A stretch of DNA of 64,000 nt, taken from contig NW_003314263.1 in assembly GCF_000143415.4 (NCBI RefSeq), positions 2,114,403-2,178,402 on the forward strand, in the 5' to 3' direction. The notes below the pieces were generated by a model. It did no database searches. It was given only the letters and a program-made list of their open reading frames with translations, and was not told where the DNA came from. The stretch comes from Selaginella moellendorffii. Lineage: Eukaryota > Plantae > Lycopodiophyta. The position numbers and the translations under genes are program-made. Shown here in pieces: positions 8,757 to 60,620 of the stretch. Positions within the stretch are counted from its first letter, which is position 1. Each line of letters starts with the position of its first letter.

Positions 8757-10323
8757 TGTGAGACACAAATCCCTAATCCCCAAAATGGAGATGAAAGGGT
8801 GCCACATGGTAATGGCTGAAGCGAAAGCCAAACAAGCGTAACACATTTGGACTAAAAGCTACAACTTGAAAGGTCAAGAGCAAGAGTGGAACTCCTAACG
8901 AAGTGCTCGAGGAATAAGCACAAAATGAGCAATAAGTGAGTCTCTAAAAAAGGGACACAAGAGGGCCAACACATGACACGTAGAGGAGTTTGAGATGGAC
9001 CTGAGATGGAGTCTGAGATGGAGTTCGAGATGGAGTCCAAGATGGATCTGAGATGGAATCTGAGATGGAACCCAAGATAGAGTTCGAGATGGAGTCTGAG
9101 ATGGAGTCCGAGATGGACTCAAGATGGACTCAAGATGGAGTTCAAGATGGACCTGAGATGGAGCCTAAGATGGACCGAGATGGAGTTCGAGATGGACCTG
9201 AGATGGAATCTGAAATAGAGACCGAGAAGGACCCGAGGTGGAGTCCGAGGTCGAGACTGAGATCGAGACCGAGGCCGAGACCGAGTTCGAGTTTGAGTCT
9301 GAGTCCGAGTCCGAGTTTGAATCCGAGGGTGAAAGCCCAAAGTGTTCATCTCCCAGACCCTAGGGGGTTTGGTGAGCTCCAAAAGTATAGTAGGGGGAAG
9401 GCTCTAGTGGAGCCAGTTTGGCTAGGAAAGGCTAATTTGGCCCAGGAAGGTTGTACCTAGGTGTTGTGTGATGGGATAACCACTGGGAAGTCCAAGGCTA
9501 GAGTGAATACAGATTGATAAGCGAGGTAGCTTGGTGAAGTGTTCAAGAGCCAATTCTAGTTCCCCTGAGAGATCGAATGGCTGATGCTCCCAATTCAAGT
9601 GTTGGTGGCACTATCTACTTGGATACCTGGCGTGGCTCAATGGAACTTTGCTCTAAGCCCATAGCTAGAGCACCCAAAGGTAGAAGGTAGGGAGAGTACC
9701 TATGAGGCTCACGTAGGGCCACGGTGTTCCGAAATGTTGTTCCAAAGTCCCAAACTATAGAAAGGAAGAAGAGTGGTCCTTTGGTGTAGTGACCAATGAT
9801 ACAATCATGTGGTGAGAAAATCCCAGAGGACAGTGGGACTTAGTGGTCGAACTTATGGGCCTTGTCTCAGTGGTAGTGTTGGCAAACACGGCCATGGACA
9901 GAAAAGGGATTTGGTGGGGACTGTAAAAGAAATATTGGGAAAGGTTGTTCCCTATGTCTGCGAGCATCTTAAGGATGCTAAGGAGTGGACCTAAGATGGT
10001 CACTCATGGACGGATGGCCCAGTCTTTGAGAGACGGGACTGCGATGTAAGTGGTGTTAGACCACCGGTGTGACCAAGGTGAATGGGCATGGCCTTAGCAT
10101 AATGGACTAGTATGTCAGTGGTACCTTGGGGTGTCAGTCATAGGATCGGACACATGGAACACTTGGACCAAGTGCAATGGTTGAGTGGCATAGATGCCAT
10201 TCTCGAGGCTACCAAGTCCCTAAATCCAGAATAGGATTTACAAAAGTTGTGAGTGAGACTCCCCTAAGTGGTCGAAGGTGTGGTTAAGTGACTAAAGTAG
10301 AATGAAAAATTTAGTCACTTACA
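8757..10323 (+). mobile_element. Solo long LTR nested in the older element
   Basis: Runs TGTGAGACACA...CACTTACA. Flanks are TCCTG/TCTTG (TSD, 1 mismatch) and host internal sequence is contiguous across it. Confidence 0.88.
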
Positions 10324-12325
10324 TCTTGATACATGGTTAGATTGATTAATGTAAAACTCAGTATATCTAACTTGAACAGTCTAGTGCAAATAGCATCGAG
10401 GATGTGGTGAATGAGATGAGAACACCCAATCTCAGTTGCTATGGACTTTTTGCTGGAAGGGGTAACTTGGGTGCACTACCAAGTGTGGGGGATGCTCCTA
10501 GAGTCATGGTCAACAACTTAAAAGTTTGGAAGACCTAGTATTTATTAGCAAACCTGTTAAGAGGTCAAGGTGAGATCATTAAGTGATCTTTTAGCTAAAT
10601 AAGAATAAAGTTCTTGTTAGGTTAAGGAATAAGGTTTTTAGTTTAAAGTGTTGATTTGAACTATTAGCAATGGTGTAACTTGGTCAAGGTGATCAAGTGG
10701 GAAGGACACTTAAGGGAAATGAACTATGACAATACAATGGTATTATGAGTTTAGGAAAATATCTTTATAGAAGGACCTATGGGTAGGTCACAAAGTTGGG
10801 CTGTAGATAAAGCCCACAACCAAAAAATGTTAAAAAAACTTACTAAGGGTGAACACATCTAGATTTGGTAAAATAAAACCTTTGCTAAGAAGCCAAAAGG
10901 ATACCTCAAAGATGGAAGTAGTAATCATATAGCGTTTGATGCAAAAATCAAAGGATAGAAGCAAAAAACTAATGGCCAAGAATGGGCCTTGGAAATTATT
11001 GGAGGGTATTCAAATGACAAGTTAAGTAAAGAACCACCATCTAATGGATGCTAACGGATTGTAGGAAAGAAAATGTATTTCTAATGATGGAATTCCCAAA
11101 TGCTCTAATTTGTGAAGATGAAAGCTCCAAAAGATTGAGTGGCAAGGTAGCCAAATGATAGGGCTATAGGCAGCCCTAATATAAATGATGGATAAATGGA
11201 ATTTAGTGTTTAGGGTGGTATGAAATAAAAGAGAGGATAATTATGCTCTTAATTAAAGGATTTCCTAGAATGGGGAAGTGGAATTTACACAACATGTGCA
11301 ATGCAAGGTGTTTGAGACATTAAAGAAATTGACTTGAGAAGTCAATATTATAATTTTAAAGTATGATGGTTATGTTGATGGAGGCTAAGACTACTTTAGA
11401 ATGAATAGTAAGATTGAGATAAAGAAGGTATCTCTAACAGGTTTAATAAGAACTAAACGAACAAAGGGAGAGAACCATCACATGTGATCTAATGAGACTT
11501 TAAGTTGGAGAGATTATACTCCTTAAAGGATGGAAAAAGCAAAGTGAGCCTTTAGTGTTGTACCATTAATAAATATTAGCTTGGTGCTAAGGAAAATGGT
11601 AATCTATGATGGGGTTACTTTATGAAATGGTTATCATTTGATGAGGACATTGAACTTCGTTTATAGGTGGTAGAGTTGTGAGACACAAATCCCTAAGCCC
11701 CAAAGTGAAGCCGAGAGGGTGCCACGTAATAGTAGCCAAATAAAAGCTAAACAAGCATAACACATTTCGATTAAAAGCTTCAACTCGAAAAGTTGAGAGC
11801 AAGAGTGGAACTCCCAATAAAGTGCTCAAAGAATGAGCACAAAGTGATCAATATGCAAGCCTCTAGAAAAGGGACACAATAGGACTAACACATACATGTG
11901 GAAGTGTCAAGACCAAGTCCGAGATGGAGTCCAAGAAGGAGTCCAAGATGGAGTCCGAGATGGAGTCCGAGTTGGAGTCCAAGATGAACCTGAAATGGAC
12001 CCGAGATGGAGTTCGAGAAGGAGTCTGAGATGGACCCAAGATGGAGTCTGAGAAGGAGTTTATAGCATATGTGGTTTTCACCTTTTATCCTATAGTGATT
12101 TACCATAGGATAACCACAAAGCGAAACCTAAACTCTCTATATGCCACATGTTATATACCATATGCCACATGCCACATGTCCAAAGGATAATAGAGCAAAA
12201 CCCAAGCTTCAAGGCCTTGGGCCATTGAATGAAGGAACGGAGCTAAACTTCTAAGCGTAGAGCCAAAGAGCAAAGAAATTGAAGTATAGAGCAACTCCTA
12301 AGTGTACAGCCCAAAGAGTTAAGGG

Positions 12326-14453
12326 TGTAAGCGACTAATTTTTCCATTCTACTTTAGTCACTTAACCACACTTCCAACCACTTAGAGGAGTCTCATTCAC
12401 AACCTCCATAAGTCCAATTTAGGACTTGGGACTTGCTAGCCCCAAGAATGGCATCCATGCCACTCCACACTTGCACCTGGTCCAAGTGCTCCACGTGTCC
12501 GGTCCCAAGACCGACACCCAAAGGTACCACTGACATCTCGGCCCGTTACGCTAAGGCCATGCCCATTCACCTTTGCTGCACTAGTGGTCCAATACCACTT
12601 GCATCACCATCCCGTCTCTCCAAGACTGGGCCGTCTATCCACGAGTGGTCATCCTAGATTCACTCCTTAGCATCCTTAGGATGCCCACAGACCTGGGGAA
12701 TCGCCTTCCCCAAAGTCCCTTTGTCAGTTCCTACCAAGTCCCTTCCTGCCCCTGGCCGTGTTTACCAACACTGCCACTGGATCGAGGCCCACAGGCCCGA
12801 CCACTAAGTCCCATGGTCCTCTGGGACTTCCTCACCACACGACTGTGTCCTTGGTCACTACCCCAAAGGACTGCTCCTCTTCCTTTCCACAGTCTAGGCT
12901 TTTGGGACAACATTTCGGAACACCGTGGCCTTACGCGAGCCACCTGGGTACTCTCCCCGCCTTTCGCCTTTAGGTGCTCTAGCCATGGGCTTAGAGCGAG
13001 GTTCCGTTGAGCCACGCCTGGTATCCAAGTAGGTAGTGCCACCCACACTTGGACTGGGAGCATCGGCCAGTCGATCTCCCGGGGGAACTAGAGCCGGCTC
13101 TTGAACACATCACCAAGCTACCCCGCTTGTCGGTCTGTGTTCACTCTAGTCTTGGACTTCCCAGTGGGCAGCTCATCACCCAACACTGGGTCTGGCCTTC
13201 CTGGGCCAAACTGGCCTTTCCTGGCCAAACTGGCTCCACTGCAGTCCTCCCCCTTCGTGTCTAAGTCTTTGCCAAGACCAACACCGCTCTTTCTCATGCC
13301 AACCATTAGCACTGCCCCATAGAGGTCACACACAACTTTATGTCAAAGTTGTTTTCTTCTGGGAACACCTTTCCCATAACTTTAGCATGGCACATTTTGC
13401 CATCGATGAGATACTCTCTGTTCTCATCCTTGGATCCTATGATCCCCCCCCATCCTTTGTGGGGTACAACGCACCTTAGTCCAAGTGCTTCATTCAGTCC
13501 CTTTTAGGACCTTCCCTTGACTCTACTTGAGTCGTCTAGCAGTTTTGGACTTGGTTAATCCACCGACCCGTAAGGTCCTACTTGTGAGGCACTAGCTCAC
13601 TGGAATACACATCTTGCATTCCGGTCCTACTCAAAAGGACTATTTTCACAAGCGTTACTCCGACACTTGATTTTGTTCTCTAGGGGCAACCTTTGCCCCT
13701 TAGGACTACTTGTCCATGTGATGAGAATACCAACTCATCCACTTAATACACCCCCAACTCCTTGGGTTGTTCCAGCATTTATTAGAGGTAGCCCCGGCTA
13801 CCATTTCAAGGACTTGAGTCCTCTTCCGTATTTGACCTTCCACGGTCATTACCTTTGGTCTCACATTCATGAGCACCAACCTCAACTATATGAGGATAAT
13901 CTTGTGACTCCTTTATTGTTTTGGAGTCTCTATCTTTCCCGTGATCCCAACTTTAGTTGTTTACCACAACAACCTAAGCCAATTTGCTGAGACAAATGCT
14001 CATCCGGATCACATCCTCAACTCAATGAGGAAAACCTTGCATTGTTCCCAAGACCCCAAAGTCGTTCCATTATTGGCCCTTTTCTATCCACCACCTCGTC
14101 TACAAGTTCACACATGAACTGTAATGGAGAGCCATGTCTTCCCGACTTGCTACTCCTCAAGGATAGGCCCACTCCTCGGACCTTCCAATGCCAACACTAG
14201 TGGTGATATACTTGAGCACCAATAAAAGTCGGACTAAGGAACAGCTCCGATACCAAGTTGTAAGCTCTTGAGTTTGGACTTCCTGGAAGGTCACCCAGCC
14301 CAGTACTATTCAAACCCAAGGACACTTAACTCCAAAATATCCCAAGACCCTTAACCGATTGGAAAAGGGGGTGCACTCTTGTTCATGGGCCCTTTCCCTC
14401 TATATTTGAACCCCATGGATCGTCTCTCAAGTCGTTCTCTTTGGTTGCTTACA
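12326..14453 (-). mobile_element. Hybrid retroelement: short (TRIM) LTR + PBS + LARD internal 5' region + 3' part of long LTR
   Basis: Short LTR at 14259-14453; PBS TGGTATCGGAGC (minus, 14244-14255); 13256-14258 matches about 23865-24870; 12326-13255 matches the 3' ~930 bp of the long LTR. AAGGG flanks both ends (12321-12325, 14454-14458). Confidence 0.88.
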
Positions 14454-21725: not shown

Positions 21726-22419
21726 AACCTATGTGTTTTAAAACCAAAACTGGTATCAATTTTAGATATTTGTACTTTTTATATAAGTTTTGTTCAAAAA
21801 TAAATATATATATATAGAAGTACTTTGAACCAAAAATGGCTGTTAAAAATATGCTTTCCTTGATAAGTTTGAATATCTTTTTCTAGCACTAGAAGCTTTA
21901 CTTAGTTATGATATACTGCTTATCAACACTTCTGTGGTAAAGCATTACCTCCAACAAAGCAAGCCACTACTCTTGCCACATATCACTCACTTGGGAATGG
22001 GTTTTGATCTTCTTACACACCAGACCCAATAAACTCATGGCCTCTCAATTCATTGAATATTCAATTGAAAAGAAATATCACCAATCACTCCAAAGGAAAC
22101 TGAGGTTAAAGTCTCATTTGCACTTAAATAGTGCATTGGATTAGCCTTTGGATTTTCATTTGTGTCATGAGTCAAACTTCTAAACTCCTTGTGAGACACA
22201 AACTCCCTAGGCCCCAAAGTGGAGCCGAAAAGGGTGCCACGTGGTAGTGGCCGAAGCGAAAGCCCAAATGAGTGTAACACGTTTGGATTAAAAGCTCTGA
22301 CTTGGAAGGTCGAGAGCGGGAGTGGAACTCCCAACAAAGTGCTCAAGGAGCGAGCACGAGGCGAGCAATAAGCAAGGCTCCAGAAAGGGACCCAAAAAGG
22401 ACCAACACATGACACGTGG

Positions 22420-22868
22420 AAGTGTCCGAGATGGAGTCTGAGGTGGACCCTAGTTGGAGTCCGAGATGGACCCAAAGTGGAGTCCGAAGTGGAGCCGAGA
22501 TGGAGTCCGATATGGAGTCCGAGATGGACCCGAAGTGGAGTCCGAGATGGAGTCCAATATGGAGTCCGATATGGAGTCCGAGATGGACCGAGACGGAGTC
22601 CGAGATGGAGTCCGAGATGGAGTCCGAGATGGAGTCCGAGAAGGACCCAAGATGGAGTCCGAGGTCGAGACCGAGACTGAGACCAGGACCAAGACCGGGA
22701 CCGGGACCGGGACCGGGACCGGGACCGAGACCGAGACCGGGACCGAGACCGAGACCGAGACCAAGGCCAAGGCTGAGACCGAGCCCGAGCCCGAGTCCGA
22801 GTCCAAGTCCGAGTCTGAGTCCAAGTCCGAGTCCGAGTCCGAGTCCGAGTCCAAGTTCGAGTCTGAGA
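22420..22868 (+). repeat. Tandem array inside 5' LTR (12-mer GAGATGGAGTCC, then 6-mers GAGACC/GGGACC, then GAGTCC)
   Basis: Directly visible. Homologous arrays at about 5060-5190, 8985-9325, 11910-12060, 18350-18520 (minus) and 28190-28655. Confidence 0.92.
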
Positions 22869-23867
22869 GGGTGAAAGCCCAAAGCGTTCGTCTCCCAGAC
22901 CCTGGGGGGTTTGGTGAGCTCCAAAAGTATAGTAAGGGGGAGGACTGCAGTGGAGCCAGTTTGGCCAGGAAAGGCCAGTTTGGCCCAGGAAGGCCAGACC
23001 CAGTATTGGGTGATGAACTGACCACTAGGAAGTCCAAGACTAGAGTGAATATAGACCGACAAGCGGGGTAGCTTGGTGAAGTGTTCAAGAGCCGGCTCTA
23101 GTTCCCCCGGGAGATCGACTGGCCGATGCTCCTAGTCCAAGTGTGGGTGGCATTACCTACTTGGATACCCGGTGTGGCTCAACGGAACCTCGCTTTAAGC
23201 CCATGGCTAGAGCACCTAAAGGTGAAAGGTGGGGAGAGTACCCAAGTGGCTCGCGTAAGGCCACGGTGTTCCGAAATGTTGTCCCAAAGGCCCAGACTGT
23301 GGAAAGGAAGAGGAGCAGTCCTCTGGGGTAGTGACCAAGGACACAGTCGTGTGGTGAGGAAGTCCCAGAGGACCGTGGGACTTAGTGGTCGGGCCTGTGG
23401 GGCTCGATCCAGTGGTAGTGTTGGTGAACACGGCCATGGGCAAAAAGGGACTTGGTGGGGACTAGAAAAAGGGATATTGGGGAAGGCTATTCCCCATGTC
23501 TGTGGGCATCCTAAAGATGCTAAGGAGTGGATCTGGAATGATCACTCATGAATGGATGGTCTAGTCCTTGAGAGACAGGATTGTGATGCAGGTGGTGTTA
23601 GACCACCGGTATGACCAAGGTAAAGGGGCATGGCCTTAGCGTAACGGGCTAGTATGTCAGTGGTACCTTGGGGTGTCGGTCTTGGGACCGGACACGTGGA
23701 GCACTTGGACTAAGTGCAAGAGATGAGTGGCGTGGATGCCATTCTCGGGGCTAGCAAGCCCCAAGTCCTGAATTGGACTTAAGGAGGTGGTGAGTGAGAC
23801 CCCTCCAAGTGGTCGAAGGCGTGGTTAAGTGACTAAAGTAGAATGGAAAAATTAGTCGCTTACAACT

Positions 23868-23879
23868 TGGTATCAGAGC
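23868..23879 (+). promoter_or_regulatory. Primer-binding site complementary to initiator tRNA-Met
   Basis: TGGTATCAGAGC, 3 nt after the LTR end. Confidence 0.92.
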
Positions 23880-26800
23880 TGTTCCTTAGTCTGACTTTTA
23901 TTGGTGCTCAAGTATATCACCATTGATATTGGCATCGGAAGGTTCTAGGAGTGGGCCTATCCTTGAGGAGTAGCACGTCGAGAGGACATGGCTCTCCACT
24001 TGAGTTCATGCATGAACTTGGGCACGATGTGGTGGATAGAAAAGGGGCCAGTAAGGGAACGACTTTGGGATCTTGGGAACAGTATATGGTTTTCCTCAGA
24101 GAGTTGAGGATGTGATCCAGATGAGCGTTTGACTTAGCAAATTGGCTAATGTAGTTGCGGTAAACAACTATAGTTGGGATCACGGGAAAGATAAAGACTC
24201 CAAAGCAATAAAGGAGTCACAAGATTATCCTCATATAGTTGAGGTTGGCGCTCATGAATGTGAGACTTGAAGTGATGACCATGGGAGGTCAAATACGGAA
24301 GAGGGCTCAAGTCCTTGAAATGGTAGCTGGGGCTACCTTTAATAAATGCTGGAACAACCCAAGGAGTTGGGGGGTGTACTTAGAGATGAGTTGGTATTCT
24401 CATCACATGGACAAGTAGTCCTAAGGGGCAAAGGTTGCCCCAGAGAACAAAATCAAGTGTCAGAGTAACACTTGTGAAAATAGTCCTTGTGAGTGAGGAC
24501 ATGAATGCAAGAAGTGTATTCTAGTGAGCTAGTGCCTAACAAGTAGGACCTTACGGGTCTGTGGATTAACCAAGTCCAAAACTGCTAGATGACTCAAGTA
24601 GAGTCAAGGAATGGTCCTAAAGGACTGATGTAAGCATTTGGACTGAAGTGTGTGGTACCCCACAAAGGATGGGGGGGATCATAGGATCCAAGGATGAGAA
24701 CAGAGGGTATCTCATCGATGGCAAAATGTGCCATGCTAAAGTCGTAGGAAGGGTGTTCCCAAAAAAAAAACAACTTTGAAACAAAGTTGTGTGTGACCTC
24801 TATGGTGCAGTGCTAACGGATGGTTGGTATGAGAAAGAGTGGTATTAATCTTGGCAAAGACTTAAACACAAAGAAAAAGTGTCATAGAGGTAGGCTCGTG
24901 GAGCCGATGGTGTGGAGACACCAAATGTGCCAAGGTGTGATACCTTGAGGCTATGTTAGTGGGTTCATGAGAACCCCTTGCCAAAAGAATCCCAATGGAA
25001 ATGGGAATAGCATAGCCTAAGCTGCAGAGCATGCAATTGGAGTGTGGTGACCCAGATAATGATGGAGGTGTGGAAGCACCAGCAATGAGTTGTAGGACTT
25101 GACAACTATGAGGCAACTAAGCAAGAGGTGCAAAATAATTGCTTAAACGGGTAGAAGGTAGCTACCCAAGCCTTCTTAATGGCATAAGGAAATTGGATAT
25201 ACCATTACGGGGGATAAGTTGCTTATGTTGCGATATAGTAAGTCAATGTCATGAAAGGAAATACTCATTGTCAAGGAAGCCGTCATTGGGACACCTGAAC
25301 ACTCTAGAACACCAGGAGGTGGTGTTTGATGTCGCGAGAGCAATAGATAAAGCCCAAAGGACTAAGTCCCTAGCGAATGATGGATAGAAGGTGTTATCCA
25401 AATGTCCAAGGTGGCGGAGACAGGAGAAGACTGTCTACTCGAATTGGACAAAGCCAAAAATGAAATTTTGGCAAGGCTAGCGATGGGCATGTAAAGGCCT
25501 ATAAGCAACAACGTAATCTCGGTGTGTGGGATTATAGGGTGAGCATACCTGGATTGAGGAACCACTCCCTAAGCTCTTGGGTAGGTTCATCCCTAAGAAT
25601 ACTTGCTAAAGCATGATAGAAAGTGCAAAGCTATCCTCCTGGTCTGGAGGAGAATGACCGATGAAGCTAAAAAGCAAGAAGTAAGGGGGTAGAACCGAAC
25701 CATAGGAATCGAAAGGCATAACCAAGGTTGGTTATGCCAGTTGGGAGTAGAGAATCAAGTGGGGGCTCGAGGTTGTGGTTGCTAGCAACTGTGAGGCCAT
25801 GGAGAGTCTAAAATATGGAATTGTCCATGTTAGACTATATGGCAACTATAAAGCTTGCGAAAAGGGAGGCCTTAGCAAACTAAGGGACAAAGTTCCTTCA
25901 AGGTTCCCAAAGATGATTCTAGGTAACTTAGTACCTAGAAAGGCCAAGTGTAAATGGTTCATGGAACGCGCGAAATCAGAGTGGCGCAGCAGAAGCGTGG
26001 TCTTGAAGCTTGCCATGAGGCAAGGCTATCAAGGTTAGGGAAGTAATTCCCGAGTGTTCAAAGAAAGGGCTTTGAACGAAAGTCGATAGCTAAGGACTTT
26101 CACGCTTATGTAGGAACTATGTTACAGTGGTCGGAGGACTTGCCAAACGAGATTGGCAAGTCAAGGGAACGAATACCCTAGTTGAAGGTGATTACTTCAA
26201 AAGGGTGGGCCATGGGGCCAAGCATGGAGGAGTCCATGCATGATCACGGACTTGTCAAGTGAGAGGACTTGACAGTGTGGAGGAACTAGGTTCCTAAGCT
26301 GTGATCTATAGCGCGCTTTTGAGTATAAGTTGGTGCACCGGTGTGGGGAGTCACGCCAGGTATCCTGGGTGATGCCGTCCGTAGATGCATATACGGAGGT
26401 TGGGTTCGAGTCCCGACCCTCTAGTGCTTGGGTTCGAGTCCCAAATCGCTAGGGCGTGGTGATGGTTTGGAATATGAGGACACTCATTTTTCGGTGGTCA
26501 TGGACTCTCAGTGTGGAGACTGGTTTGGGCACACCACCAAGCGAGGGATGCCTCGGAGTCGTGATGCACGGTTAGATTGTTTAGAGTGAAAGCTCGGCAA
26601 TTCTAACTTGAACACTTTGGTGGAAAAGGACACCAAGGACGTGGTGAATGAGATGGGGACACTCAGTCTCAGTTGCTATGGATCCTTGGCCGGAAGGGCT
26701 GGCTTGGGCACACCGCCAAGTGTGGGGGATGCCCCCGGGGTCATAGTCAACAACTTAGAAGGGTTTGGAAGACTTAGTTCCTATTGGTAGACCTATTAAG

Positions 26801-28189
26801 GGGTCAAGATAAGATCACTAGGTGATATTATGGCTAAACAAGGACAAGGTCTTTGTTTGGATTAAGGAATATGATTCCCAGTTCAAAGTGTTGATTTGAA
26901 CTATTGATAAAGGTGTGGCTTGGTCAAGGTGACTAAGTGGGAAGGACACCTAAGAGAAATGAACTACTACAATATAATGATATTATGAGTTCAAGAAATT
27001 TGTCTCCAGAGACAGGCCCATGGGTGGGTCACAAGGTTGGGCTAGGAAGAGAGCCTAGAACAGTGGGGAGACTTACTAGGGGTGAACACCCTAGTCTGGG
27101 CAAAGTAGGTCCTTTGCTATGGAACCAAAAGAATACCTCAAGGAGGGAGGTAATGATCCTATGTTGCTTGGTGCAACAATCCAAGGATAGGAGCAAAAGA
27201 CGAGTGCCCAAGATAGGGCCGTGGAATCAATTGGAAAGAATCCAAGTGGCAAAGTTAGCCAAGGAACACTAATGTGTTTGATGCTAATGGATTGCGGAAA
27301 AAGAAGTGAACTTCCAAGGATAGATTCCCAAGTGCTCCAATTTGGCAAAAGAAAAGCTCCAAGTGAGGGAGCAACTAAGTAGCCAAAAGATAGGGCCGTG
27401 GACAGCCCTAGCACAAATAATGATAAATGGAACATAATGCCAATGGTGGCACAAAAATAGAAAAGTTGATGAGGGTGCCCTCGAGTAGAGAACTTCCTAG
27501 GAGGGGAAGTGGAGTTGCATAAAATGTGCAAGGCAAGGTGTCGGAGACACCTAGGAAATTGACTTCAAGAAGTCAAAAGTAAACGTTCTAAAGTGCAAAG
27601 GTAAATCAATGGGATCTGTGACTACTCAAGAATGAGTAGTGGAATTGAGTTAGAGAGGGTGTCTCTAATGGGTTTAGCAAGAACTGAACCAATAAAAAGG
27701 AGCAAACCACCTCAGGTGGTCAAGTGAGTCTCTAAGTTGGAGAGACTATCCTCCTTAGAGGATGGGCAAAGCATGGTGAGCCTTTAGTGTCGAACCATTG
27801 ACGAATATGGAGAAGGCATGGTGAGCCTTCAATGTCAAACCATTGACAAATATTGGCTAGGGGCCAAGGATGGAAATGGTAACACATGCGGGTGTTACTT
27901 TATAAAATGGTTTACCGTTCGATGAGGACATCGAACTTCATCTATGGGTGGTGGAATTGTGAGACACAAACTCCCTAGGCCCCAAAGTGGAGCCGGAAAG
28001 GGTGCCACGTTGTAGTGGCCGAAGCAAAAGCCCAAATGAGTGTAACACGTTTGGATTAAAAGCTCTGACTTGGAAGGTCGAGAGCAGGAGTGGAACTCCC
28101 AACAAAGTGCTCAAGGAGCGAGCACGAGGCGAGCAATAAGCAAGGCTCCAGAAAGGGACCCAAAAAGGACCAACACATGACACATGGAA

Positions 28190-28655
28190 GTGTCCGAGAT
28201 GGAGTCCGAGGCGGACCCTAGTTGGAGTCCGAGATGGACCCAAAGTGGAGTCCGAAGTGGAGCCGAGATGGAGTCCGATATGGAGTCCGAGATGGACCCG
28301 AAGTGGAGTCCGAGATGGAGTCCGATATAGAGTCCGATATGGAGTCCGAGATGGACCGAGACGGAGACCGAGATGGAGTCCGAGAAGGACCCGAGATGGA
28401 GTCCGAGGTCGAGACCGAGACCGAGACCAAGACCGAGACCGGGACCGAGACCGGGACCGGGACCGGGACCGGGACCGAGACCGAGACCGGGACCGGGACC
28501 GAGACCGAGACTGAGGCCAAGGCTGAGACCGAGCCTGAGCTCGAGTCCGAGTCCGAGTCCGAGTCCGAGTCCAAGTCTGAGTCCAAGTCCGAGTCCGAGT
28601 CCAAGTCTGAGTCCGAGTCCGAGTCCGAGTCCGAGTCCAAGTTTGAGTCTGAGAG
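28190..28655 (+). repeat. Tandem array inside 3' LTR
   Basis: Same unit progression as 22420-22868, net 18 bp longer. Confidence 0.92.
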
Positions 28656-29679
28656 GGTGAAAGCCCAAAGCGTTCGTCTCCCAGACCCTGGGGGGTTTGG
28701 TGAGCTCCAAAAGTATAGTAAGGGGGAGGACTGCAATGGAGCCAGTTTGGCCAGGAAAGGCCAGTTTGGCCCAGGAAGGCCAGACCCAGTGTTGGGTGAT
28801 GAACTGACCACTAGGAAGTCCAAAACTAGAGTGAATACGGACCGACAAGCGGGGTAGCTTGGTGAAATGTTCAAGAGCCGGCTCTAGTTCCCCCGGGAGA
28901 TCGACTGGCCGATGCTCCTAGTCCAAGTGTGGGTGGCACTACCTACTTGGATACCCGGCGTGGCTCAACGGAACCTCGCTTTAAGCCCATGGCTAGAGCA
29001 CCTAAAGGCGAAAGGTGGGGAGAGTACCCAGGTGGCTCGCGTAAGGCCACGGTGTTCCGAAATGTTGTCCCAAAGGCCCAGACTGTGGAAAGGAAGAGGA
29101 GCAGTCCTCTGGGGTAGTGACCAAGGACACAATCGTGTGGTGAGGAAGTCCCAGAAGACCGTGGGACTTAGTGGTCGGGCTTGTGGGCCTCGATCCAGTG
29201 GTAGTGTTGGTGAACACGGCCATGGGCAGAAAGGGACTTGGTGGGGACTAGAAAAGGGGATATTGGGGAAGGCTATTCCTCACGTCTATGGGCATCCTAA
29301 GGATGCTAAGGAGTGGATCTGGAATGATCACTCATGAACAGATGGTCCAGTCCTTGAGAGACGGGACTGTGATGTAGGTGGTGTTAGACCACCGGTATGA
29401 CCAAGGTAAAGGGGCATGGCCTTAGCGTAACGGGCTAGTATGTCAGTGGTACCTTGGGGTGTTGGTCTTGGGACCGGACACGTGGAGCACTTGGACTAAG
29501 TGCAAGGGATGAGTGGCGTGGATGCCATTCTCGGGGCTAGCAAGCCCCAAGTCCTGAATTGGACTTAAGGAGGTGGTGAGTGAAACCCCTCCAAGTGGTC
29601 GAAAGCATGGTTAAGTGACTAAAGTAAAATGGAAAAATTAGTCGCTTACACTCCTCCCTTCTCAAGAGCACCCTTCTAG

Positions 29680-55285: not shown

Positions 55286-57012
55286 ATGACGATGGCGATG
55301 GCGCGATGGCGGCAGCGGCTCCTCTCCTCGGCGTGTTCTTCGTCGTCCTCAAGTGCCGCGGCGCCGCAAGCGCTACTCCGCCTCGCGTCGTCGGCATTGA
55401 GTCGCCAGTCCTCGTCCAGGGGCTTCGCGGCGGCGCCGGACGACACCACGCCCTTCGTGGTCGATATTCCAGTGCCGTACGCGGGGCACCGGTGCGATCC
55501 GCCGGAGCAGCGGGTGGAGACCTCGGCCAAGGAGCTCGTGGATTTCTTTAAGGTGATGTATGTGATGAGAAGGATGGAGATTGCGGCGGACTCGCTCTAC
55601 AAGGCGAAGTTTATTCGCGGGTTTTGCCATCTCTACGATGGGCAGGAGGCGGTGTGCGTGGGAATGGAGGCGGCGCTCACCAAGGAGGACGCCATCATCA
55701 CTGCTTACAGGGACCACTGCACGCATATTGGACGAGGTGGCACGGTGCTGGAGGTGATGGCGGAGCTCATGGGGAGAAAAAGTGGGTGCTCGCTCGGGAA
55801 AGGTGGATCGATGCATATGTACAACAAGGAGGGGAATTTCTATGGAGGGAATGGGATTGTTGGAGCACAGACCGCGCTGGGAGCTGGGCTAGCTTTCGCG
55901 CAAAAGTATAACAAGCAGAACGCGGTGTCGCTGGCTTTGTATGGGGATGGAGCTGCCAACCAGGGACAACTCTTTGAGGCCATGAACATATCAGCGCTGT
56001 GGGACTTGCCGGTGATCTTCGTCTGCGAGAACAATCACTGTGAGTTTTTCCTTTTGCTCTTTGTTATGAGCTGACTTTTACGAGTTTTTCCTCGTTTTGA
56101 TTGTGTGGAATTTTTGTCGTGTAGATGGAATGGGGACGGCCGAGTGGCGCTCAGCAAAATCTCCAGAATACTACAAACGTGGAGATTATGTCCCGGGTCT
56201 TAAGGTACAAGTTGTGCTCCAAAACTACAATGATCGTCTCCTTCTTTTTCTTTCAACTGTTACTTTGGTGGTTGTCTCTTAGATTGATGGAATGGACGTT
56301 TTAGCAGTCAAGCAGGGCGTCCGATTCGCAAAGGAGCACGCTTTGACAAAAGGCCCCATCGTAAGCTTATCTAGTTTTTATATCTTTTGGCTTTACTCCT
56401 CACGGGGGATGGGAACGTTAGACTGGTGTTGGAAATGGATACTTATCGTTATCATGGGCACTCCATGTCTGATCCCGGGAGTACATATCGGACAAGGGAA
56501 GAGATTCCGGCGTGAGACAGGTAACTTGGAGTCATTATCGTTTGCACACTGCACTTTTAAAACAATAATTTGCTGCCACTGCCAGGAGCGAGACCCGATT
56601 GAAAGAGTAAGAAAGCTTCTTTTGGCGAAAGAGATCGTGACTGTAGCCGATTTGAAGGTGAGTGCGCTGTGTGCGCTATTGGCAGAGATTTCTCTCAACT
56701 TGGTCTTTACAGAACTTGGAGAAGCAAGCCAAGGCAGAAGTGGACGAGGCCGTTAATCAAGCCAAGGTAGGACTTTCTCTTCTCAAGTCGAGTGAAACCC
56801 TTGGAATCTAAAAATCTTTCGGGCACGATTTTTGCAGGAGGGCGGTCAGCCCGAAACTCACGAGCTGTTTACGCACGTTCACGTCAAGGGACTGAAGCAA
56901 TTGGTAAGACGAAGATTTGTAGCTTTCTTCACAGTTGATTGCTGCGAACTTTCTTCTTTGTTTGCAGGCGTATGGCCCTGACCGCAAGGAAGTTATAGTT
57001 CCACTTCCATGA
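55286..57012 (+). CDS. Mitochondrial pyruvate dehydrogenase E1 alpha (with two apparent lesions in this sequence)
   Basis: Transit peptide, [47 protein letters not shown]. Non-AG acceptor at 56423-56425 and a 1-nt deletion near 56506. Confidence 0.92.
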
Positions 57013-57182
57013 TCGAAGAAAACGGATAGTTCGATTGTTTTTCCGGAGCTAGAAATAAGTGCTACAAAGACACTCTTGAAGTTTTGTAAGATACATATTG
57101 GACAAAATAAGAATTCGTTTGATTGATTCGAGCAAACTTTTCAAAGCTATGGTTACAAGTTTTACTACTATTTACACCATTT

Positions 57183-58433
57183 TCACGTTGATAGAGACTT
57201 GGTCGATGATTTTCTAAAGTCCTTGAAGTTGTTAAAACCGAGCCTGTGGAGCCAAGACCTGGCCGTCTCGGTGGAGATTTTTCTATGGCTAGTCATGCCC
57301 ATGAGGGAGTCAGCTGCTAGATCTCCAGCCTGCGAGAGAGAGAGAAAAAAAGAGATGGAATGGTTTTAGAGGTTTTAGAAGTGTGTAACTTTTTTCACCT
57401 GGACGTCAAGGAGGAGATCGTTGTTACAAAAGTCGCGAAACATCTTGATGATGGAGTCCTTGCGAGGAGGCTCGCCTTTCTTTGGACAGTTTTGCTCTAT
57501 CCATGCCCGAGCTTTGCTTTGCAAGTGCTCCGGTTGTAGCAGCCACTCGACTTTGACGTGCTTTCCCTGCGTGAATCAAAGAAAAGGAGGATTTTTACAA
57601 ATGACTAATGAAAATAAACAATCTCTACAAACCTGCTGTGACTCCGAGAATGTACCGTCGGCTCGCCTCTCCCAGTCCTCCACCCATTTCCTCGCAGTTT
57701 TTCCAGACACGCCGACGGATTCACCAGCCTTTGCGTATGCCTCGGTTACCTGTCAAACTAAAGACGCTATTAGCTCTTCTCGACAAACAAAACAAAGGCC
57801 ACAGAGCAGTGTCCAAAGAGCAAACGAAAATCCGAAGGACTAAAGAACCGATCGAGAGAACTTTACCTTACACAGAGAATCCGAGGAGGACTGCGCCATG
57901 TACTTGTAAAACTCGGCCACGCAAAAGAGCTTTCGCGACTTAAGCGGGAGCTTCAAGACGAGCTGGAAAGAAGAGTCCCTCTCCTTGACGTAGTGTGACT
58001 TTGGCTTCCCGGGGCCCTTTTGCCTCCCCCTCTTCTTCGTCACGGCCTTGGAAGAATTCTCCTCGTTTGGAGGCATGGTCTGGAGAGAGAGCACAGTGGA
58101 CGGAGTTCTAACCGGCGGCTGTGGAGGAGGCGGCGGCGGCTGTGGAGGCGGCGTAGATTCCTGGCCCATCAGGATCATGGGATGGAAACTCTGGCCATTC
58201 TCCGCGGCCATCATCATCAAAGAAAAGCCTTGCATCGAGGCGTGCTGGTCCATGAGAATATTGTCGTGTCCCACGCCATCGTCCAATCCTTCTGATTGAT
58301 CCCTATCGCCGAGGAGCGCTACCTCGTTCGCCCAGCTCAATGCCGCAGCTGCCGCCGCAGCGTCCACGCGCTGGCAATCAAGATCCATTTCCCTGCTGTG
58401 TAGAACAGTATGCATATCTTCACCCCTGCCCAA
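57183..58433 (-). CDS. 4-exon ~332-aa protein with C-terminal transposase-type HTH/winged-HTH region (putative domesticated transposase DNA-binding domain)
   Basis: Exons 58433-57867, 57749-57633, 57566-57399 and 57329-57183 join through three phase-0 GT-AG introns into one open frame. Motifs AGESVGVSGKTARKW, SESQQGKH, KGEP, FCNNDLL, RKISTETARSWLHRLGF. Confidence 0.8.
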
Positions 58434-58718
58434 TTCCGGCCTGTGCCGCAGCGATCGCTAGGAACTGCCTAGATTACCTGCATTACTCCAACTGCGCTTT
58501 CGATCCGGCTCCACGGGCGGCGCCTCTTCTTCCTGGACGGCATTCGGGGAGATGAAGAACCCTAATTTTGCCCAACGGACTCGAACGGTCAGGATCAATT
58601 TGTATGATCAACGGCGTCATGAATATTCGCACGCAATTACGTTTAAATCCCAAATTAGTAGAAAAATTCAAATTAAAAGTTACAGTTATTATAATTATTA
58701 CATAAAAATTCATGTTCT

Positions 58719-59168
58719 TCATTTAAATAAATAGTTGCAACTCCCAAAGCCTAAAAAGTAATCAATTTTTTAACAAGAATAATTACAGAAATAAAAATAA
58801 ATCTTACTTGGATCAGTGGAAGAGATCAATGCAGTGTTGTCAAAGTAGCAATTATAATCATAGCGAGCTTTCATTTGGAAATAAAGGTTATATGCCCACG
58901 ATGCATGCGAATAGATGCTATTAGGATAAGAGCAAGGACCATCAAACTGAATCGCAGAACAATCAACTTGAGAGCACGCATAATCTAAACCCCGCTGTAG
59001 CATATCAGGAGGAATAGTAGGATTAGCTATGCAATACACTTTGCCATCGACAATACGACCAGAAGGTGTTATAGCAGTAGCATCAACCATTGAAGTTGGA
59101 AACACAAAAACAGAGCAAATCACAAACACTATAGCAAAAGCAAGACAATTCATCTTCATCATCTTCAT
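58719..59168 (-). CDS. Secreted stand-alone X8 (CBM43) domain protein, 2 exons
   Basis: Signal peptide, YCIA..LQRGLDYACSQVDCSAIQ..GPC..HASWAYNLYFQ..CYFDNTA..TDPS|FGSCNY. Confidence 0.88.
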
Positions 59169-59308
59169 CAGTCAGTTACAAAGCCTTAGAGTTTTGTTCC
59201 ACATTTATTTATGAGTTACTGGCTTCAGAACCTCTAATTAGTTTAGCAGCCCAATAAAAATGTATGGTTTCGCTCTTTTTTTTATGGTTTTTCTCAAACT
59301 GGAACATT

Positions 59309-60141
59309 CTATGGACAGAAAGTGATCGTATAGTCACCACCATTGGAACAAGTAAACGTGCTGCTTGGGTCATCGTAAGCGTAGCTATACGCGAGCGGGC
59401 AAATGTCCTTGAAAATTTTCGAGTAGGACGAGGGTTTGCAGGTCTGGGGAGTGGAGTAGTCCCCCGTGCAACAAAAAGGTGGCGTGCCAAACGCCAGGCA
59501 CGCACTCTTGCAGCCCACGACTCCGGAATAATCGTGAACTTGGAGCTCGGACGGGCACCACGGAATCACGTCCCTCAGGCAACCCGTGAAGGGGCAGCCG
59601 GACTTACTGGGAGTGATCCGGATGGGCAGATTATAGCCATCAACCAGAGAGACGTCGTAGAAGTCCAAGCCGGTGTTGGGGGTGCCACCAAGTTTAAACT
59701 CGGCAATGCTGTAGGGGGGAGCTCCTCCTATGCCTTGGCAATAGAGCTGCTTGTTACAATCCCCAGTGCTGCATCCGCTGCCTACAGGAACCACAAATCA
59801 AAGATCAAAGAATTAAATATCTCGAGGACAGACCTTGGAAGTCGCAACCCCTGCGGCCCCAGAACCGGCCACCCCAGTCCGATGTTGGAGTTCCCAAGTC
59901 TATAAAAGTGTAAGGTTCTAGCTGCGTGCCACCATTTCCAAGAGCCGGGCTATCGCCGTTGTTGAGCCATCCAGGCCAGACCGTGAACGGGCATCCATTG
60001 TATAGACGAAAGTTTATCCCAAAAGATCCTGCGGCTTTCAGCATTTAGAAAGTTCCAAGTTGTAGGAGCTGGAAGCTTACTTGAGGCATTCAAAAGAACA
60101 GTGCAAATCCAGGTCGCTAGCACCAGACGACTTTGAGCCAT
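59309..60141 (-). CDS. Thaumatin-like protein (PR-5), 3 exons
   Basis: Signal peptide, NGCPFTVWPG, WGGRFWGRRGC, CSTGDC, DFYDVSLVDGYNLP, AYSYAYDD, YTITFCP. Confidence 0.94.
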
Positions 60142-60339
60142 CTAAACGGGAAGCTACAAGTACTGCTTAAGCGATCCTGGGGTTGTCCGGCCTTTTATGC
60201 CAAGAAACGTTTGCAATCACAATTGAGAATGACTCAAGAATCATCTACCAGATTTTCAGTCAAGTGACTATAGCATGATATTCCCTTGCATCAGCAATAA
60301 GTCATCACTGGTGAGCTTAGTAATGAAATAAGGGTGCCA

Positions 60340-60620
60340 CCATGGCATTCCACGTACGCACCAAATATGAGCTTACATTCTCAAAGTAGACCCGGCCATC
60401 TTGGCAAGCATCGTGTTCCACACAAGATCTCTTTGAGGCATTCATTTGTAAGTCTCATCCAAATGGTTGGCCAGCACAGATTTTGCCATGCACGAGTTGA
60501 CTGCTGTTGCTGTGTGTTCATGGGATGATATAGCATATTCTTTTGATTCTCACAGCTGTCCATTCTGGGCCACGGAGTGTACATTTACATTGTTGCCACA
60601 TTTGCTATACATTTGGAATG
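60340..60620 (-). pseudogene. PLS-type PPR fragment
   Basis: Minus frame gives MYSKCG..AQNGQL*E..MPQRDLVWNTML with stops. Confidence 0.55.

What the first reader, a model, noticed from the sequence alone, without database searches (positions are those of the whole stretch)
57183..58433. Spliced host-like gene built from a transposase DNA-binding domain (putative domesticated IS630/Tc1-mariner-like transposase)
Seen: the ORF track shows only exon 1, but three phase-0 introns join a ~332-aa frame. It has a low-complexity Ala/Met/Pro-rich N-terminus and a basic AT-hook/NLS-like KKRGRQKGPGKPK. It then reads VTEAYAKAGESVGVSGKTARKWVEDW..GTFSESQQGKHVKVEWLL..LQSKARAWIEQNCPKKGEP..FRDFCNNDLL..RKISTETARSWLHRLGF and stops 16 aa later. 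Recalled knowledge (not database-verified): this motif series (HTH, S.QGK, KG.P, F..N..LL, KIS.ETAR.W.H.LGF) matches the N-terminal half of IS630/Tc1-mariner-related transposases of fungi and early-branching animals. In those proteins it is followed by KKG.Y/F.DGHER and the DDE domain. Here the protein ends at that boundary, no TIRs or TSDs are evident, and it sits among ordinary host genes. Inference: a catalytically dead, exapted DNA-binding protein, possibly an undescribed transcription factor or transposon repressor of early-diverging land plants, perhaps of horizontal origin.
Basis: partly seen in the sequence, partly recalled or inferred. Interest (0 to 1): 0.85.

Follow-up and report, generated by a model that had tools for sequence, protein, structure and literature searches.

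The report
Tamed transposase DNA-binding gene in spikemoss
This is a real, expressed four-exon gene of the spikemoss Selaginella moellendorffii that keeps only the DNA-binding front end of a Tc1/mariner/IS630-type jumping-gene enzyme; lycophytes and peat mosses have conserved the same cut-down gene, so it is an old "tamed" transposon gene whose job is still unknown.

Summary
A minus-strand gene (CDS 58415..57183; 4 exons; three GT-AG phase-0 introns of 117, 66 and 69 nt) encodes 326 aa. This product is identical to the RefSeq model XP_002962945.2 / SELMODRAFT_438090, and the GenBank model SELMODRAFT_438228 is the same from a later ATG.

RNA-derived contigs from four studies skip exactly these three introns.

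- The basic C-terminal 200 aa match, at phmmer E down to 1e-9, the N-terminal two-HTH region of about 90 eukaryotic proteins.
- Those proteins continue past the shared ISxETARxWLHxLGF motif into KKGxYxDGHER and a Tc1-like DDE domain (sub-threshold DDE_3; Sleeping Beauty catalytic core E=6e-4).
- The Selaginella protein stops 16 aa after LGF.
- No DDE remnant and no TIRs are present in the window.

Orthologs with the same truncation exist in Diphasiastrum (81% identity in the domain), in about eight Sphagnum species (62%) and on one unidentified plant-like contig. The three intron positions are identical where DNA was available. All DBD-only genes form one clade (100/100). In the domain dN is 0.20-0.29 while dS is saturated.

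The most likely function is a nuclear sequence-specific DNA-binding regulator, but this is inferred, not shown. The AT-hook and horizontal-origin ideas have no support.

Verdict: a new member of a known kind (domesticated transposase DNA-binding domain), annotated only as "hypothetical protein". I found no paper on it.

The parts
57183..58562 (-). Whole transcribed gene (SELMODRAFT_438228 / LOC9647136-type model). The 5' UTR reaches at least 58562. The 3' UTR runs below 57183 and abuts or overlaps the 3' end of the convergent PDH E1-alpha gene.
   Evidence: RNA-type contigs from 4 studies cover 57214-58562 with three intron-skipping joints. The protein is identical to P0113.
57867..58415 (-). 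Exon 1 coding part (183 aa). It holds an acidic, low-complexity Ala/Met/Pro-rich N-terminal region (pI 4.45), then the basic patch and the first helices of the DNA-binding domain.
   Evidence: The N-terminal motifs GFSLMMMA and PST(V/I)LSLQTMP are shared with Diphasiastrum.
58002..58040 (-). Basic patch KKRGRQKGPGKPK: NLS-like, not a canonical AT-hook (no RGRP core).
   Evidence: Read from the sequence. It is conserved in Diphasiastrum, weaker in L002, and replaced by an R/G/K-rich stretch in Sphagnum.
57750..57866 (-). Intron 1 (117 nt, GT..AG, phase 0, with an in-frame stop).
   Evidence: Skipped in RNA contigs of 4 runs. Same position in Sphagnum and in L002.
57657..57947 (-). First helix-turn-helix subdomain (model residues 31-88; intron 1 lies inside this span). 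The recognition helix is GKTARKWVEDW in exon 2.
   Evidence: AF2 with a 60-sequence alignment: pLDDT 84.6 overall and >90 here. Best fold match is TnpE 2rn7 (Z 7.4, rmsd 1.7 over 53 aa) and Mu transposase I-beta. HTH_23 E=0.0066. IS630 NCBIfam E=0.022. SETMAR DNA-binding domain 7s03 E=0.043 with the family profile.
57633..57749 (-). Exon 2 (117 nt, 39 aa).
   Evidence: Identical exon length in Sphagnum magellanicum, S. fallax and L002.
57567..57632 (-). Intron 2 (66 nt, GT..AG, phase 0).
   Evidence: Same position in Sphagnum and L002.
57399..57566 (-). Exon 3 (168 nt, 56 aa): the linker GKHVKVEWLLQ and the start of the second subdomain (KKGEP, FRDFCNNDLL).
   Evidence: Same length in Sphagnum and L002. 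The near-invariant family columns G97, G127, F139, N144 and L148 lie here.
57330..57398 (-). Intron 3 (69 nt, GT..AG, phase 0).
   Evidence: Same position in Sphagnum and L002.
57231..57536 (-). Second (winged-)HTH-like subdomain (model residues 107-185; intron 3 lies inside this span), ending in ISTETARSWLHRLGF.
   Evidence: Helices H109-122, H132-158 and H172-181. The equivalent stretch of relative P0044 hits Pfam HTH_33. W178, L182 and G183 are near-invariant across 60 family members.
57183..57329 (-). Exon 4 (147 nt including the stop). The protein ends 16 aa after LGF, exactly where full-length relatives continue into KKGxYxDGHER and the DDE domain.
   Evidence: tblastn of 13 full-length relatives matches only 57222-57752 and nothing from their catalytic parts anywhere in the window.

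Best explanation
The locus is an expressed, spliced host gene of Selaginella moellendorffii. It descends from the N-terminal bipartite (HTH-linker-HTH) DNA-binding region of a eukaryotic IS630/Tc1/mariner-superfamily (Pfam DDE_3-type) transposase. The catalytic DDE domain, the terminal inverted repeats and mobility have been lost.

The cut-down gene arose once. It has been kept under purifying selection in lycophytes (Selaginella, Diphasiastrum) and peat mosses (Sphagnum), so it probably predates the moss-vascular plant split.

Shown here: homology, truncation, splicing, expression, orthology with shared introns, and constraint.

Inferred: the protein enters the nucleus through its basic patch, binds specific DNA through the two helix-turn-helix subdomains, and uses its acidic low-complexity N-terminus to recruit partners. 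That is, it acts as a transcription or chromatin regulator, possibly at sites descended from the ancestral transposon ends.
For: Gene and expression:
- Gene model and splice sites.
- Identical to the RefSeq/GenBank proteins.
- All three introns are skipped in contigs from 4 studies.

Homology to transposases:
- Exhaustive phmmer gave 97 hits.
- The family consensus runs ...ISxxTARxWLHxLGF......KGxYxDGHE.
- About 50 relatives carry DGHER straight after LGF, with long C-terminal tails.
- DDE_3 is found in 6 of 10 long relatives, together with HTH_29/33/23/28.
- A profile of their catalytic part hits the Sleeping Beauty catalytic domain 5cr4 at E=5.9e-4, on the PxxSPDLNPIExxW motif.
- The Atlas neighbours of relative P0072 are 92-100% DDE_3.

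Fold:
- pLDDT 84.6 with two helical subdomains.
- The nearest folds are transposase HTH domains.
- The profile's best PDB hit is the SETMAR DNA-binding domain.

Truncation:
- No catalytic remnant in the window, in the Sphagnum locus or in L002.
- No TIRs.

Orthology:
- Diphasiastrum 81%, Sphagnum 62%, all ending 16-37 aa after LGF.
- The three intron positions and the 117/168-nt exon sizes are identical in Sphagnum and L002.
- A Diphasiastrum isoform differs by an insertion exactly at junction 1.

Single origin and constraint:
- The DBD-only genes form one clade at 100/100, with a long stem and short tips.
- Domain dN is 0.20-0.29 with synonymous sites saturated; the LWL85 ratio is 0.13-0.15.
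- Between two Sphagnum species the DBD exons differ at 0.8% against 3.3% in the introns (Fisher p=0.001).

Architecture:
- An acidic N-terminus (pI 4.5-5.0) plus a basic DBD (pI 9.7-10.0) is conserved in three genera.
Against: - No Pfam or NCBIfam model reaches its curated cutoff on the protein itself.
- The DDE_3 hits on the relatives are all below the gathering score.
- Foldseek against the PDB gave nothing at E<=0.001, and the VIA Z-scores (up to 7.4) are in the range that small helical domains reach by chance.
- The distribution is patchy. Named orthologs were found only in lycophytes and Sphagnum, so vertical descent needs several losses.
- Synteny is not seen between Selaginella and Sphagnum.
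- DNA binding, nuclear localisation and any phenotype are untested.
- dN/dS within Sphagnum rests on 5 substitutions in the DBD and is uninformative on its own.
Confidence: 0.72

Rival explanations
1. Transposon repressor. The DBD-only protein competes with an active transposase of the same family for its terminal repeats, like the KP repressor of the P element or truncated Tc1/mariner products causing dominant-negative inhibition. It would be kept as genome defence rather than as a regulator of host genes.
For: It retains precisely the end-binding module and nothing else. DBD-only derivatives are a known route to transposase inhibition (established knowledge).
Against: Conservation of 62-81% over a moss-lycophyte distance, with very short tips on the tree, would need a matching transposon to persist with unchanged ends in all these lineages. 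No related DDE-bearing sequence was seen in the 64-kb window or in the Sphagnum and L002 loci. No named Selaginella or Sphagnum full-length relative appeared. The conserved acidic N-terminal extension is not needed for simple competition.
Confidence: 0.13
2. The patchy distribution reflects horizontal transfer of an already truncated gene (or of its parent transposon, followed by parallel truncation) between peat-moss and lycophyte lineages, rather than descent from a common land-plant ancestor.
For: Named orthologs occur only in Sphagnum and lycophytes, and not in the other annotated land-plant proteomes reachable. Tc1/mariner-type elements are notorious for horizontal transfer (established knowledge).
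Against: Three identical intron positions and identical exon lengths. The same truncation point. The tree topology agrees with the species tree (lycophytes together, Sphagnum outside) and has deep internal branches. Synonymous sites are saturated between lineages, so any transfer would itself be ancient. A still deeper DBD-only sister lineage exists (L004/L005).
Confidence: 0.08
3. The resemblance to transposases is a generic helix-turn-helix similarity. On this view the gene is an ordinary lineage-specific HTH protein, or transposases captured a host DNA-binding domain.
For: All curated-model hits on the protein itself are sub-threshold. The fold matches include Myb/SANT, sigma factors and other generic three-helix bundles.
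Against: phmmer E-values of 1e-9 to 1e-6 were obtained against dozens of proteins, over 110-160 aligned residues spanning both subdomains and the linker. There are nine near-invariant columns across 60 sequences. The shared motif runs up to the exact junction with DGHER and the DDE domain in the relatives. The DBD-only genes form a single long-stemmed clade among more than 50 diverse DDE-linked relatives, which makes loss of the DDE domain the parsimonious direction.
Confidence: 0.04
4. A decaying transposon fragment or mis-annotated pseudogene with no function.
For: Truncated transposase reading frames are common in genomes. The gene has no known domain annotation.
Against: It is spliced and expressed in four studies. 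The frame is intact in at least four genera, with the same end and the same introns. dN is far below dS. Exons are more conserved than introns. It lies between housekeeping genes without repeats.
Confidence: 0.03

Closest known systems
SETMAR (Metnase) DNA-binding domain, derived from the Hsmar1 mariner transposase in anthropoid primates
   Same: It is a host gene that retains the bipartite HTH end-binding domain of an IS630/Tc1/mariner-superfamily transposase. The family profile's best PDB sequence hit is this domain (7s03, E=0.043, aligned over helix 1 to the recognition helix and the following acidic/Ser stretch).
   Different: SETMAR keeps the whole, catalytically altered transposase fused to a SET domain and is 40-58 My old (PMC7325037). 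The plant gene keeps only the DBD, carries an acidic low-complexity N-terminus instead of a fused host domain, and is far older. The sequence similarity is marginal.
CENP-B / TIGD / POGK-type pogo-derived genes and the Pax paired domain (Tc1-like DBD descendants)
   Same: These are recurrent domestications of the two-HTH DNA-binding region of ITm-type transposases into host DNA-binding proteins (PMC7325037, PMC7386202; the Pax origin is from established knowledge).
   Different: They come from different transposase clades (pogo/DDE_1, Tc1) and occur in animals or fungi. I found no sequence-level relationship to them. Most of them retain a dead DDE domain, which this gene lacks entirely.
Eukaryotic DDE_3-type transposases with the LGF-KKGxYxDGHER junction (unnamed clade; neighbours in Rotifera, Arthropoda, Nematoda, Basidiomycota, diatoms, oomycetes, Cnidaria)
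   Same: The DNA-binding region is homologous over both subdomains. This is the donor family.
   Different: They carry a Tc1-like catalytic domain. The Selaginella protein and its orthologs stop 16-37 aa after LGF. They show short branches and conserved introns, which are the behaviour of a host gene.
Known plant domesticated transposases: FHY3/FAR1 and MUSTANG (Mutator), DAYSLEEPER (hAT), ALP1/HDP1 and HDP2 (PIF/Harbinger)
   Same: The same evolutionary process in plants: a transposase-derived nuclear protein conserved as a host gene (PMC3499209, PMC3435246, PMC5339849).
   Different: Those come from other superfamilies and are mostly angiosperm-wide or angiosperm-specific, and their function is known. 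This gene is of the Tc1/IS630 type, is DBD-only, and is so far seen only in lycophytes and Sphagnum. It has no functional data and I found no publication on it.
KP repressor of the Drosophila P element (a truncated, DBD-only transposase product)
   Same: The architecture is the same idea: the DNA-binding N-terminus without the catalytic part. It serves as the model for the repressor rival.
   Different: KP is encoded by internally deleted mobile copies, is young and is multi-copy. This gene is immobile, intron-bearing and anciently conserved.

Membership tests
IS630/Tc1/mariner-superfamily (DDE_3-type) transposase / autonomous transposon | N-terminal bipartite helix-turn-helix DNA-binding region homologous to that of family members | tested here: met
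   phmmer E 1e-9 to 1e-4 against about 90 relatives over both subdomains. Near-invariant columns in a 60-sequence alignment. Two helical subdomains at pLDDT 84.6. Transposase HTH folds are the nearest matches. Curated models are only sub-threshold on the protein itself.
IS630/Tc1/mariner-superfamily (DDE_3-type) transposase / autonomous transposon | DDE/DDD catalytic (RNase H-like) domain | tested here: not met
   The protein ends 16 aa after the DBD. Relatives continue with DGHER and DDE_3. tblastn with 13 full-length relatives finds no catalytic-part match in the 64-kb window (best E 0.46).
IS630/Tc1/mariner-superfamily (DDE_3-type) transposase / autonomous transposon | Terminal inverted repeats with a TA target-site duplication | tested here: not met
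   The inverted-repeat scan of 55500-60500 gives only short, 71-93% chance-like pairs. The only pair bracketing the gene lies inside the PDH and thaumatin coding sequences.
IS630/Tc1/mariner-superfamily (DDE_3-type) transposase / autonomous transposon | Multiple dispersed copies (mobility) | tested here: inconclusive
   One copy in the window. Two annotated loci on the same 4.46-Mb scaffold encode the identical protein. This could be a haplotype duplicate or a recent duplication. The whole genome could not be searched.
Domesticated (exapted) transposase-derived host gene | Orthologs in different species with a conserved gene structure and an intact frame | tested here: met
   Diphasiastrum, Sphagnum spp. 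and the L002 contig share the same end point and the same three intron positions, with 117/168-nt exons.
Domesticated (exapted) transposase-derived host gene | Purifying selection on the retained domain | tested here: met
   dN is 0.20-0.29 with dS saturated (LWL85 ratio 0.13-0.15). The N-terminus is far less conserved (21-26% identity against 63-73%). Sphagnum DBD exons differ at 0.8% against 3.3% in introns, p=0.001. Tips are short on a long stem.
Domesticated (exapted) transposase-derived host gene | Transcription and correct splicing | tested here: met
   Intron-skipping contigs in 4 runs from 4 studies.
Domesticated (exapted) transposase-derived host gene | Conserved synteny of orthologs | tested here: inconclusive
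   The Selaginella neighbours are PDH E1a, X8 and thaumatin. The Sphagnum neighbours are RecA_N and PP2. No shared neighbour was seen, but this is uninformative at such a distance. Diphasiastrum DNA was not obtainable.
Domesticated (exapted) transposase-derived host gene | Demonstrated host function | not testable with these tools
   This needs DNA-binding, localisation and loss-of-function experiments.
AT-hook DNA-binding motif proteins | Core R-G-R-P flanked by basic residues | tested here: not met
   The sequence reads KKRGRQKGPGKPK (RGRQ, with no Pro after GR). The Sphagnum orthologs have a Gly-rich R/K stretch instead.

The most novel reading that the evidence does not exclude
This may be the founding example of a Tc1/IS630-type transposase DNA-binding domain recruited as a host regulator in land plants. 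It would have arisen once, before mosses and vascular plants diverged, possibly earlier given the deeper DBD-only sister lineage on contigs L004/L005. It would have been retained for more than 400 My in Sphagnum and lycophytes and lost in seed plants. That would make it a previously unrecognised, non-seed-plant-specific transcription-factor family.
Probability: 0.5. Interest if true: 0.62.

Novelty: new member of a known kind. Interest (0 to 1): 0.5.

Why it matters
Domesticated transposases have supplied plants with important regulators such as FHY3/FAR1, DAYSLEEPER, MUSTANG and ALP1/HDP. All the well-studied cases come from the Mutator, hAT or Harbinger superfamilies and are mostly centred on angiosperms.

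An anciently conserved, DBD-only derivative of a Tc1/IS630-type transposase, confined so far to lycophytes and peat mosses, would add a new source superfamily. It would also add a candidate lineage-restricted transcription-factor family for early-diverging land plants.

The case is directly testable. The domain is small (about 200 aa), folds confidently, and has clear orthologs for comparative DAP-seq. It also gives a clean example of how intron positions can separate vertical inheritance from transposon spread.

Tried and rejected
- Single-sequence AlphaFold of the domain gave pLDDT 44.8 and was unusable. It was replaced by a run with a 60-sequence alignment.
- The Atlas feature search with exon 3 alone gave only sub-0.9 noise.
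- Foldseek against the PDB found nothing at E<=0.001.
- phmmer of the single domain against PDB sequences gave no hit.
- The look-up of encoding contigs found no record for P0001 or for the Diphasiastrum protein. No Diphasiastrum DNA was therefore available, so there is no lycophyte-lycophyte dN/dS or synteny.
- I tried to name the organism behind contigs L002 and L004/L006 through neighbouring ORFs. Pfam gave nothing, and the last large protein search returned only unnamed hits. The taxa remain unknown.
- dN/dS between S. magellanicum and S. fallax rests on too few substitutions (14 nt in all) to be meaningful. I used the exon-versus-intron contrast instead.
- NG86 and YN00 failed on the deep pairs because synonymous sites are saturated.
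- I considered that the junction motif survives as a vestige (KKG in Sphagnum, KAMDGD in L004). An ungapped comparison does not line the residues up, so I dropped it.
- The fact that all three Selaginella introns are multiples of 3 looked odd. Each contains in-frame stops, and the orthologs' intron lengths are not multiples of 3, so I treat it as coincidence.
- Literature searches for the locus tag, for domesticated transposases in Selaginella, Sphagnum or land plants, and for C21orf140 plus transposase found nothing on this gene.
Full report
**1. What is in the sequence**

On the minus strand of 57183-58415, four open stretches lie in one genomic frame. Joining them at canonical GT..AG sites gives these exons: 58415-57867, 57749-57633, 57566-57399 and 57329-57183. 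The introns are 117, 66 and 69 nt, all phase 0. The result is a 981-nt CDS of 326 codons.

Exons have 49-58% G+C and introns 30-43%.

The first ATG (58415) gives 326 aa. All three introns happen to be multiples of three, but each has in-frame stops.

**2. Already annotated, expressed and spliced**

A search with exon 1 returned SELMODRAFT_438228 of Selaginella moellendorffii. This is a 317-aa "hypothetical protein" that uses the second ATG.

My 326-aa model is letter-for-letter identical to P0113. That entry carries the accessions EFJ35795.1 (SELMODRAFT_438090), XP_002962332.1 and XP_002962945.2, named "uncharacterized protein LOC9647136". So two loci on the same 4.46-Mb scaffold encode the same protein.

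An earlier first-stage note of this scan (s1-402846, 1.84 Mb upstream) describes what is probably that second locus. I could not read its DNA.

Contigs from four different studies of the same organism were laid on 56900-58800. They carry joints that skip 69, 66 and 117 nt with CT..AC ends on the + strand, which are exactly the three introns. They cover the gene from at least 57214 to 58562.

These small assemblies (24-34 Mb) also skip an intron of the neighbouring PDH gene, so they are RNA-derived. In two runs the contig runs on into the 3' end of the convergent PDH E1-alpha gene, so the two 3' UTRs abut or overlap.

**3. Context**

Upstream on the + strand is pyruvate dehydrogenase E1-alpha. 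Downstream on the - strand are an X8-domain protein and a thaumatin.

There is no second copy in the window. No inverted repeats bracket the gene beyond short chance-like pairs.

**4. Homology**

Pfam and NCBIfam give only sub-threshold hints on the protein itself:
- HTH_23 at E=0.0066 on exon 2.
- IS630 transposase equivalog at E=0.022, on profile positions 14-76.

An exhaustive phmmer search of residues 118-317 against 1.84 billion representatives gave 97 hits at E<=1e-3. Apart from orthologs, these are proteins of 100-1258 aa at 26-45% identity, aligned over 110-160 residues.

Their consensus reads ...TVRxW..DF..N.G.F..S..GKH......L.DE.....A..W.R.NA..KG.PN.T...F..W.N..LLP...........IS..TAR.WLH.LGF......KG.Y.DGHE. 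About fifty of them carry KKGxYxDGHERxDVV directly after LGF, followed by tails of up to several hundred residues.

The evidence that these relatives are Tc1/IS630-type transposases is as follows:
- Six of the ten long relatives tested hit Pfam DDE_3 (E 2e-5 to 0.03, all below the gathering score). Their N-terminal parts hit HTH_29, HTH_33, HTH_28 and HTH_23.
- A profile of their post-LGF parts hits the Sleeping Beauty catalytic domain (5cr4) at E=5.9e-4, over the PxxSPDLNPIExxW segment that holds the last catalytic residue.
- The nearest ESM-Atlas clusters of relative P0072 are 92-100% DDE_3. They come from Rotifera, Arthropoda, Nematoda, Basidiomycota, diatoms, oomycetes and Cnidaria.

**5. 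Fold**

With the 60-sequence alignment, AlphaFold2 gives mean pLDDT 84.6. The model has two helical subdomains, at model residues ~31-88 and ~107-185, joined by an extended linker that contains GKHVKVEWLLQ.

The first subdomain superposes best on transposase HTH domains: TnpE 2rn7 (Z 7.4, rmsd 1.7 Å over 53 aa) and Mu transposase I-beta (Z 5.4). Myb/SANT-like and sigma-like three-helix bundles follow at Z about 5.

The Atlas shape search puts an "IS630 transposase-related" cluster first, with Mu, IS66, HTH_Tnp_1 and DDE_1 proteins among the top ten, though the TM scores are low. Foldseek against the PDB had nothing significant.

The DBD-family profile's best PDB sequence hit is the mariner-derived SETMAR DNA-binding domain (E=0.043).

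The fold evidence is consistent with the transposase reading but is not decisive on its own. The sequence evidence carries the claim.

**6. Truncation**

tblastn with 13 full-length relatives matches only 57222-57752, which are the DBD exons. Nothing from their catalytic parts matches anywhere in the 64 kb (best E 0.46). The same holds for the Sphagnum and L002 loci.

The PDH gene's 3' end lies about 170 nt beyond the stop, which leaves no room for a degraded DDE domain.

**7. Orthologs**

The word-indexed search named three further clusters:
- Diphasiastrum complanatum: P0109, 344 aa, 81% identity in the domain.
- Sphagnum troendelagicum: P0110.
- Sphagnum magellanicum: P0002, 62%.

The Sphagnum 90% cluster also holds S. 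jensenii, S. tenellum, S. fallax, S. balticum and S. compactum. UniRef auto-names some of these "Transposase". All end 16-37 residues after LGF.

In S. magellanicum (L001) and S. fallax (L007), exact exon models place introns at the same three codon junctions...CK|V......QQ|GKH... and ...VQ|.... Exons 2 and 3 are again 117 and 168 nt. There is one extra intron in the variable N-terminus.

A Logan contig of unknown taxon (L002, SRR33208241) carries a further ortholog. It is 73% identical in the domain and has the same three introns and 117/168/147-nt exons. A Diphasiastrum isoform differs by a 16-aa insertion exactly at junction 1.

Two other unidentified eukaryotic contigs (L004/L006 and L005) carry a more divergent DBD-only homolog, about 50% identical, with different intron positions.

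**8. Phylogeny and selection**

In a maximum-likelihood tree of the domain, the five orthologs form one clade (100/100). It has a stem of 1.68 substitutions per site and tips of 0.03-0.21, against a median tip of 0.72 for the transposase relatives. The lycophytes group together and Sphagnum lies outside them.

Adding L004/L005, after dropping six long-branch rows, gives one DBD-only clade of seven (100/100) with L004/L005 as sister. The roots are midpoint only.

Between Selaginella, L002 and Sphagnum, the domain has dN of 0.20-0.29 while synonymous sites are saturated. NG86 is undefined, and LWL85 gives dS of 1.5-1.9, for a ratio of 0.13-0.15. The N-terminal region is only 21-26% identical.

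Between two Sphagnum species there are too few changes for a ratio. However, the DBD exons differ at 5 of 627 sites against 33 of 1003 intron sites (p=0.001).

**9. Mechanism**

Shown: this is a transcribed, spliced, constrained host gene that encodes only the end-binding module of a Tc1/IS630-type transposase.

Inferred:
- The basic patch KKRGRQK serves nuclear import. It is not a canonical AT-hook, because it has no RGRP core.
- The two HTH subdomains bind a bipartite DNA site, as in Tc1/mariner transposases.
- The acidic low-complexity N-terminus recruits partners. Its pI is 4.5-5.0, against 9.7-10.0 for the DBD, in all three genera.

I rate a transcription or chromatin regulator as the most likely role. 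A transposon repressor comes second, and it is disfavoured by the depth of conservation and by the absence of detectable cognate elements nearby.

**10. Novelty**

The gene model is public but uncharacterised. I found no paper on it or on a Tc1/IS630-type DBD domestication in land plants.

Domestication of transposase DNA-binding domains is a well-known process, with examples in SETMAR, CENP-B/TIGD, Pax, FHY3/FAR1 and DAYSLEEPER. This gene is therefore a new member of a known kind. It is notable for its age, its DBD-only form and its non-seed-plant distribution.

The main caveats are:
- The named distribution is patchy.
- Several contigs come from unknown taxa.
- The catalytic-domain hits on the relatives are sub-threshold.
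- There are no functional data.

Noticed in passing
window 22189-29650 (also 5302-6226, 8985-11567, 12322-14265): There is a direct repeat pair at 22189-23864 and 27957-29650 (1.7 kb, 94% identical). It looks like the LTRs of a ~7.5-kb LTR retrotransposon that has no ORF of 250 aa or more. Related fragments at 75-91% identity lie nearby in both orientations. These stretches explain the strong purine (GC and AT) skew blocks at 4-12 kb and 22-30 kb.
   Followed up: partly
window 56967-57330: RNA-type contigs of two runs run continuously from the last exon and 3' UTR of the + strand PDH E1-alpha gene into exon 4 of the - strand gene. The convergent 3' UTRs therefore abut or overlap within about 170 nt.
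   Followed up: no
same scaffold, ~1.84 Mb upstream of the window (not readable here): A second annotated locus, SELMODRAFT_438090, encodes a protein identical to this gene's 326-aa product. It could be a haplotype duplicate or a recent paralog. The scan's note s1-402846 probably describes it.
   Followed up: partly
L004:5228-7067 / L006; L005:5005-7325: Two unidentified eukaryotic contigs (SRR23617307; JGI metagenome 3300060284) carry a DBD-only homolog, about 50% identical, that is sister to the plant clade (100/100). Its intron positions differ: there is no intron at QQ|GKH, and one lies inside the KEQ...KN stretch. Its tail is about 55 aa after LGY.
   Followed up: partly
relatives of P0072 (ESM Atlas clusters): In several Atlas clusters of the donor transposase family, 14-37% of members carry Pfam PF27940 'C21orf140-like' alongside DDE_3. 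This hints that the human C21orf140 family may derive from the same kind of transposase. A paper search found nothing.
   Followed up: no
window 57330-57398, 57567-57632, 57750-57866: All three introns are phase 0 and multiples of 3 (69, 66 and 117 nt), so the whole gene sits in one genomic frame. Each intron has in-frame stops, and the orthologs' introns are not multiples of 3, so this is probably coincidence.
   Followed up: yes
P0114 vs P0109 (Diphasiastrum complanatum): Two annotated isoforms differ by a 16-aa insertion exactly at the exon 1/exon 2 junction. This suggests an alternative micro-exon or splice site at the conserved intron 1.
   Followed up: no
window 58770-59168 (-) and 59309-60141 (-): A small secreted-looking X8 (CBM43) domain protein and a thaumatin-family gene lie in tandem just upstream of the gene.
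   Followed up: no
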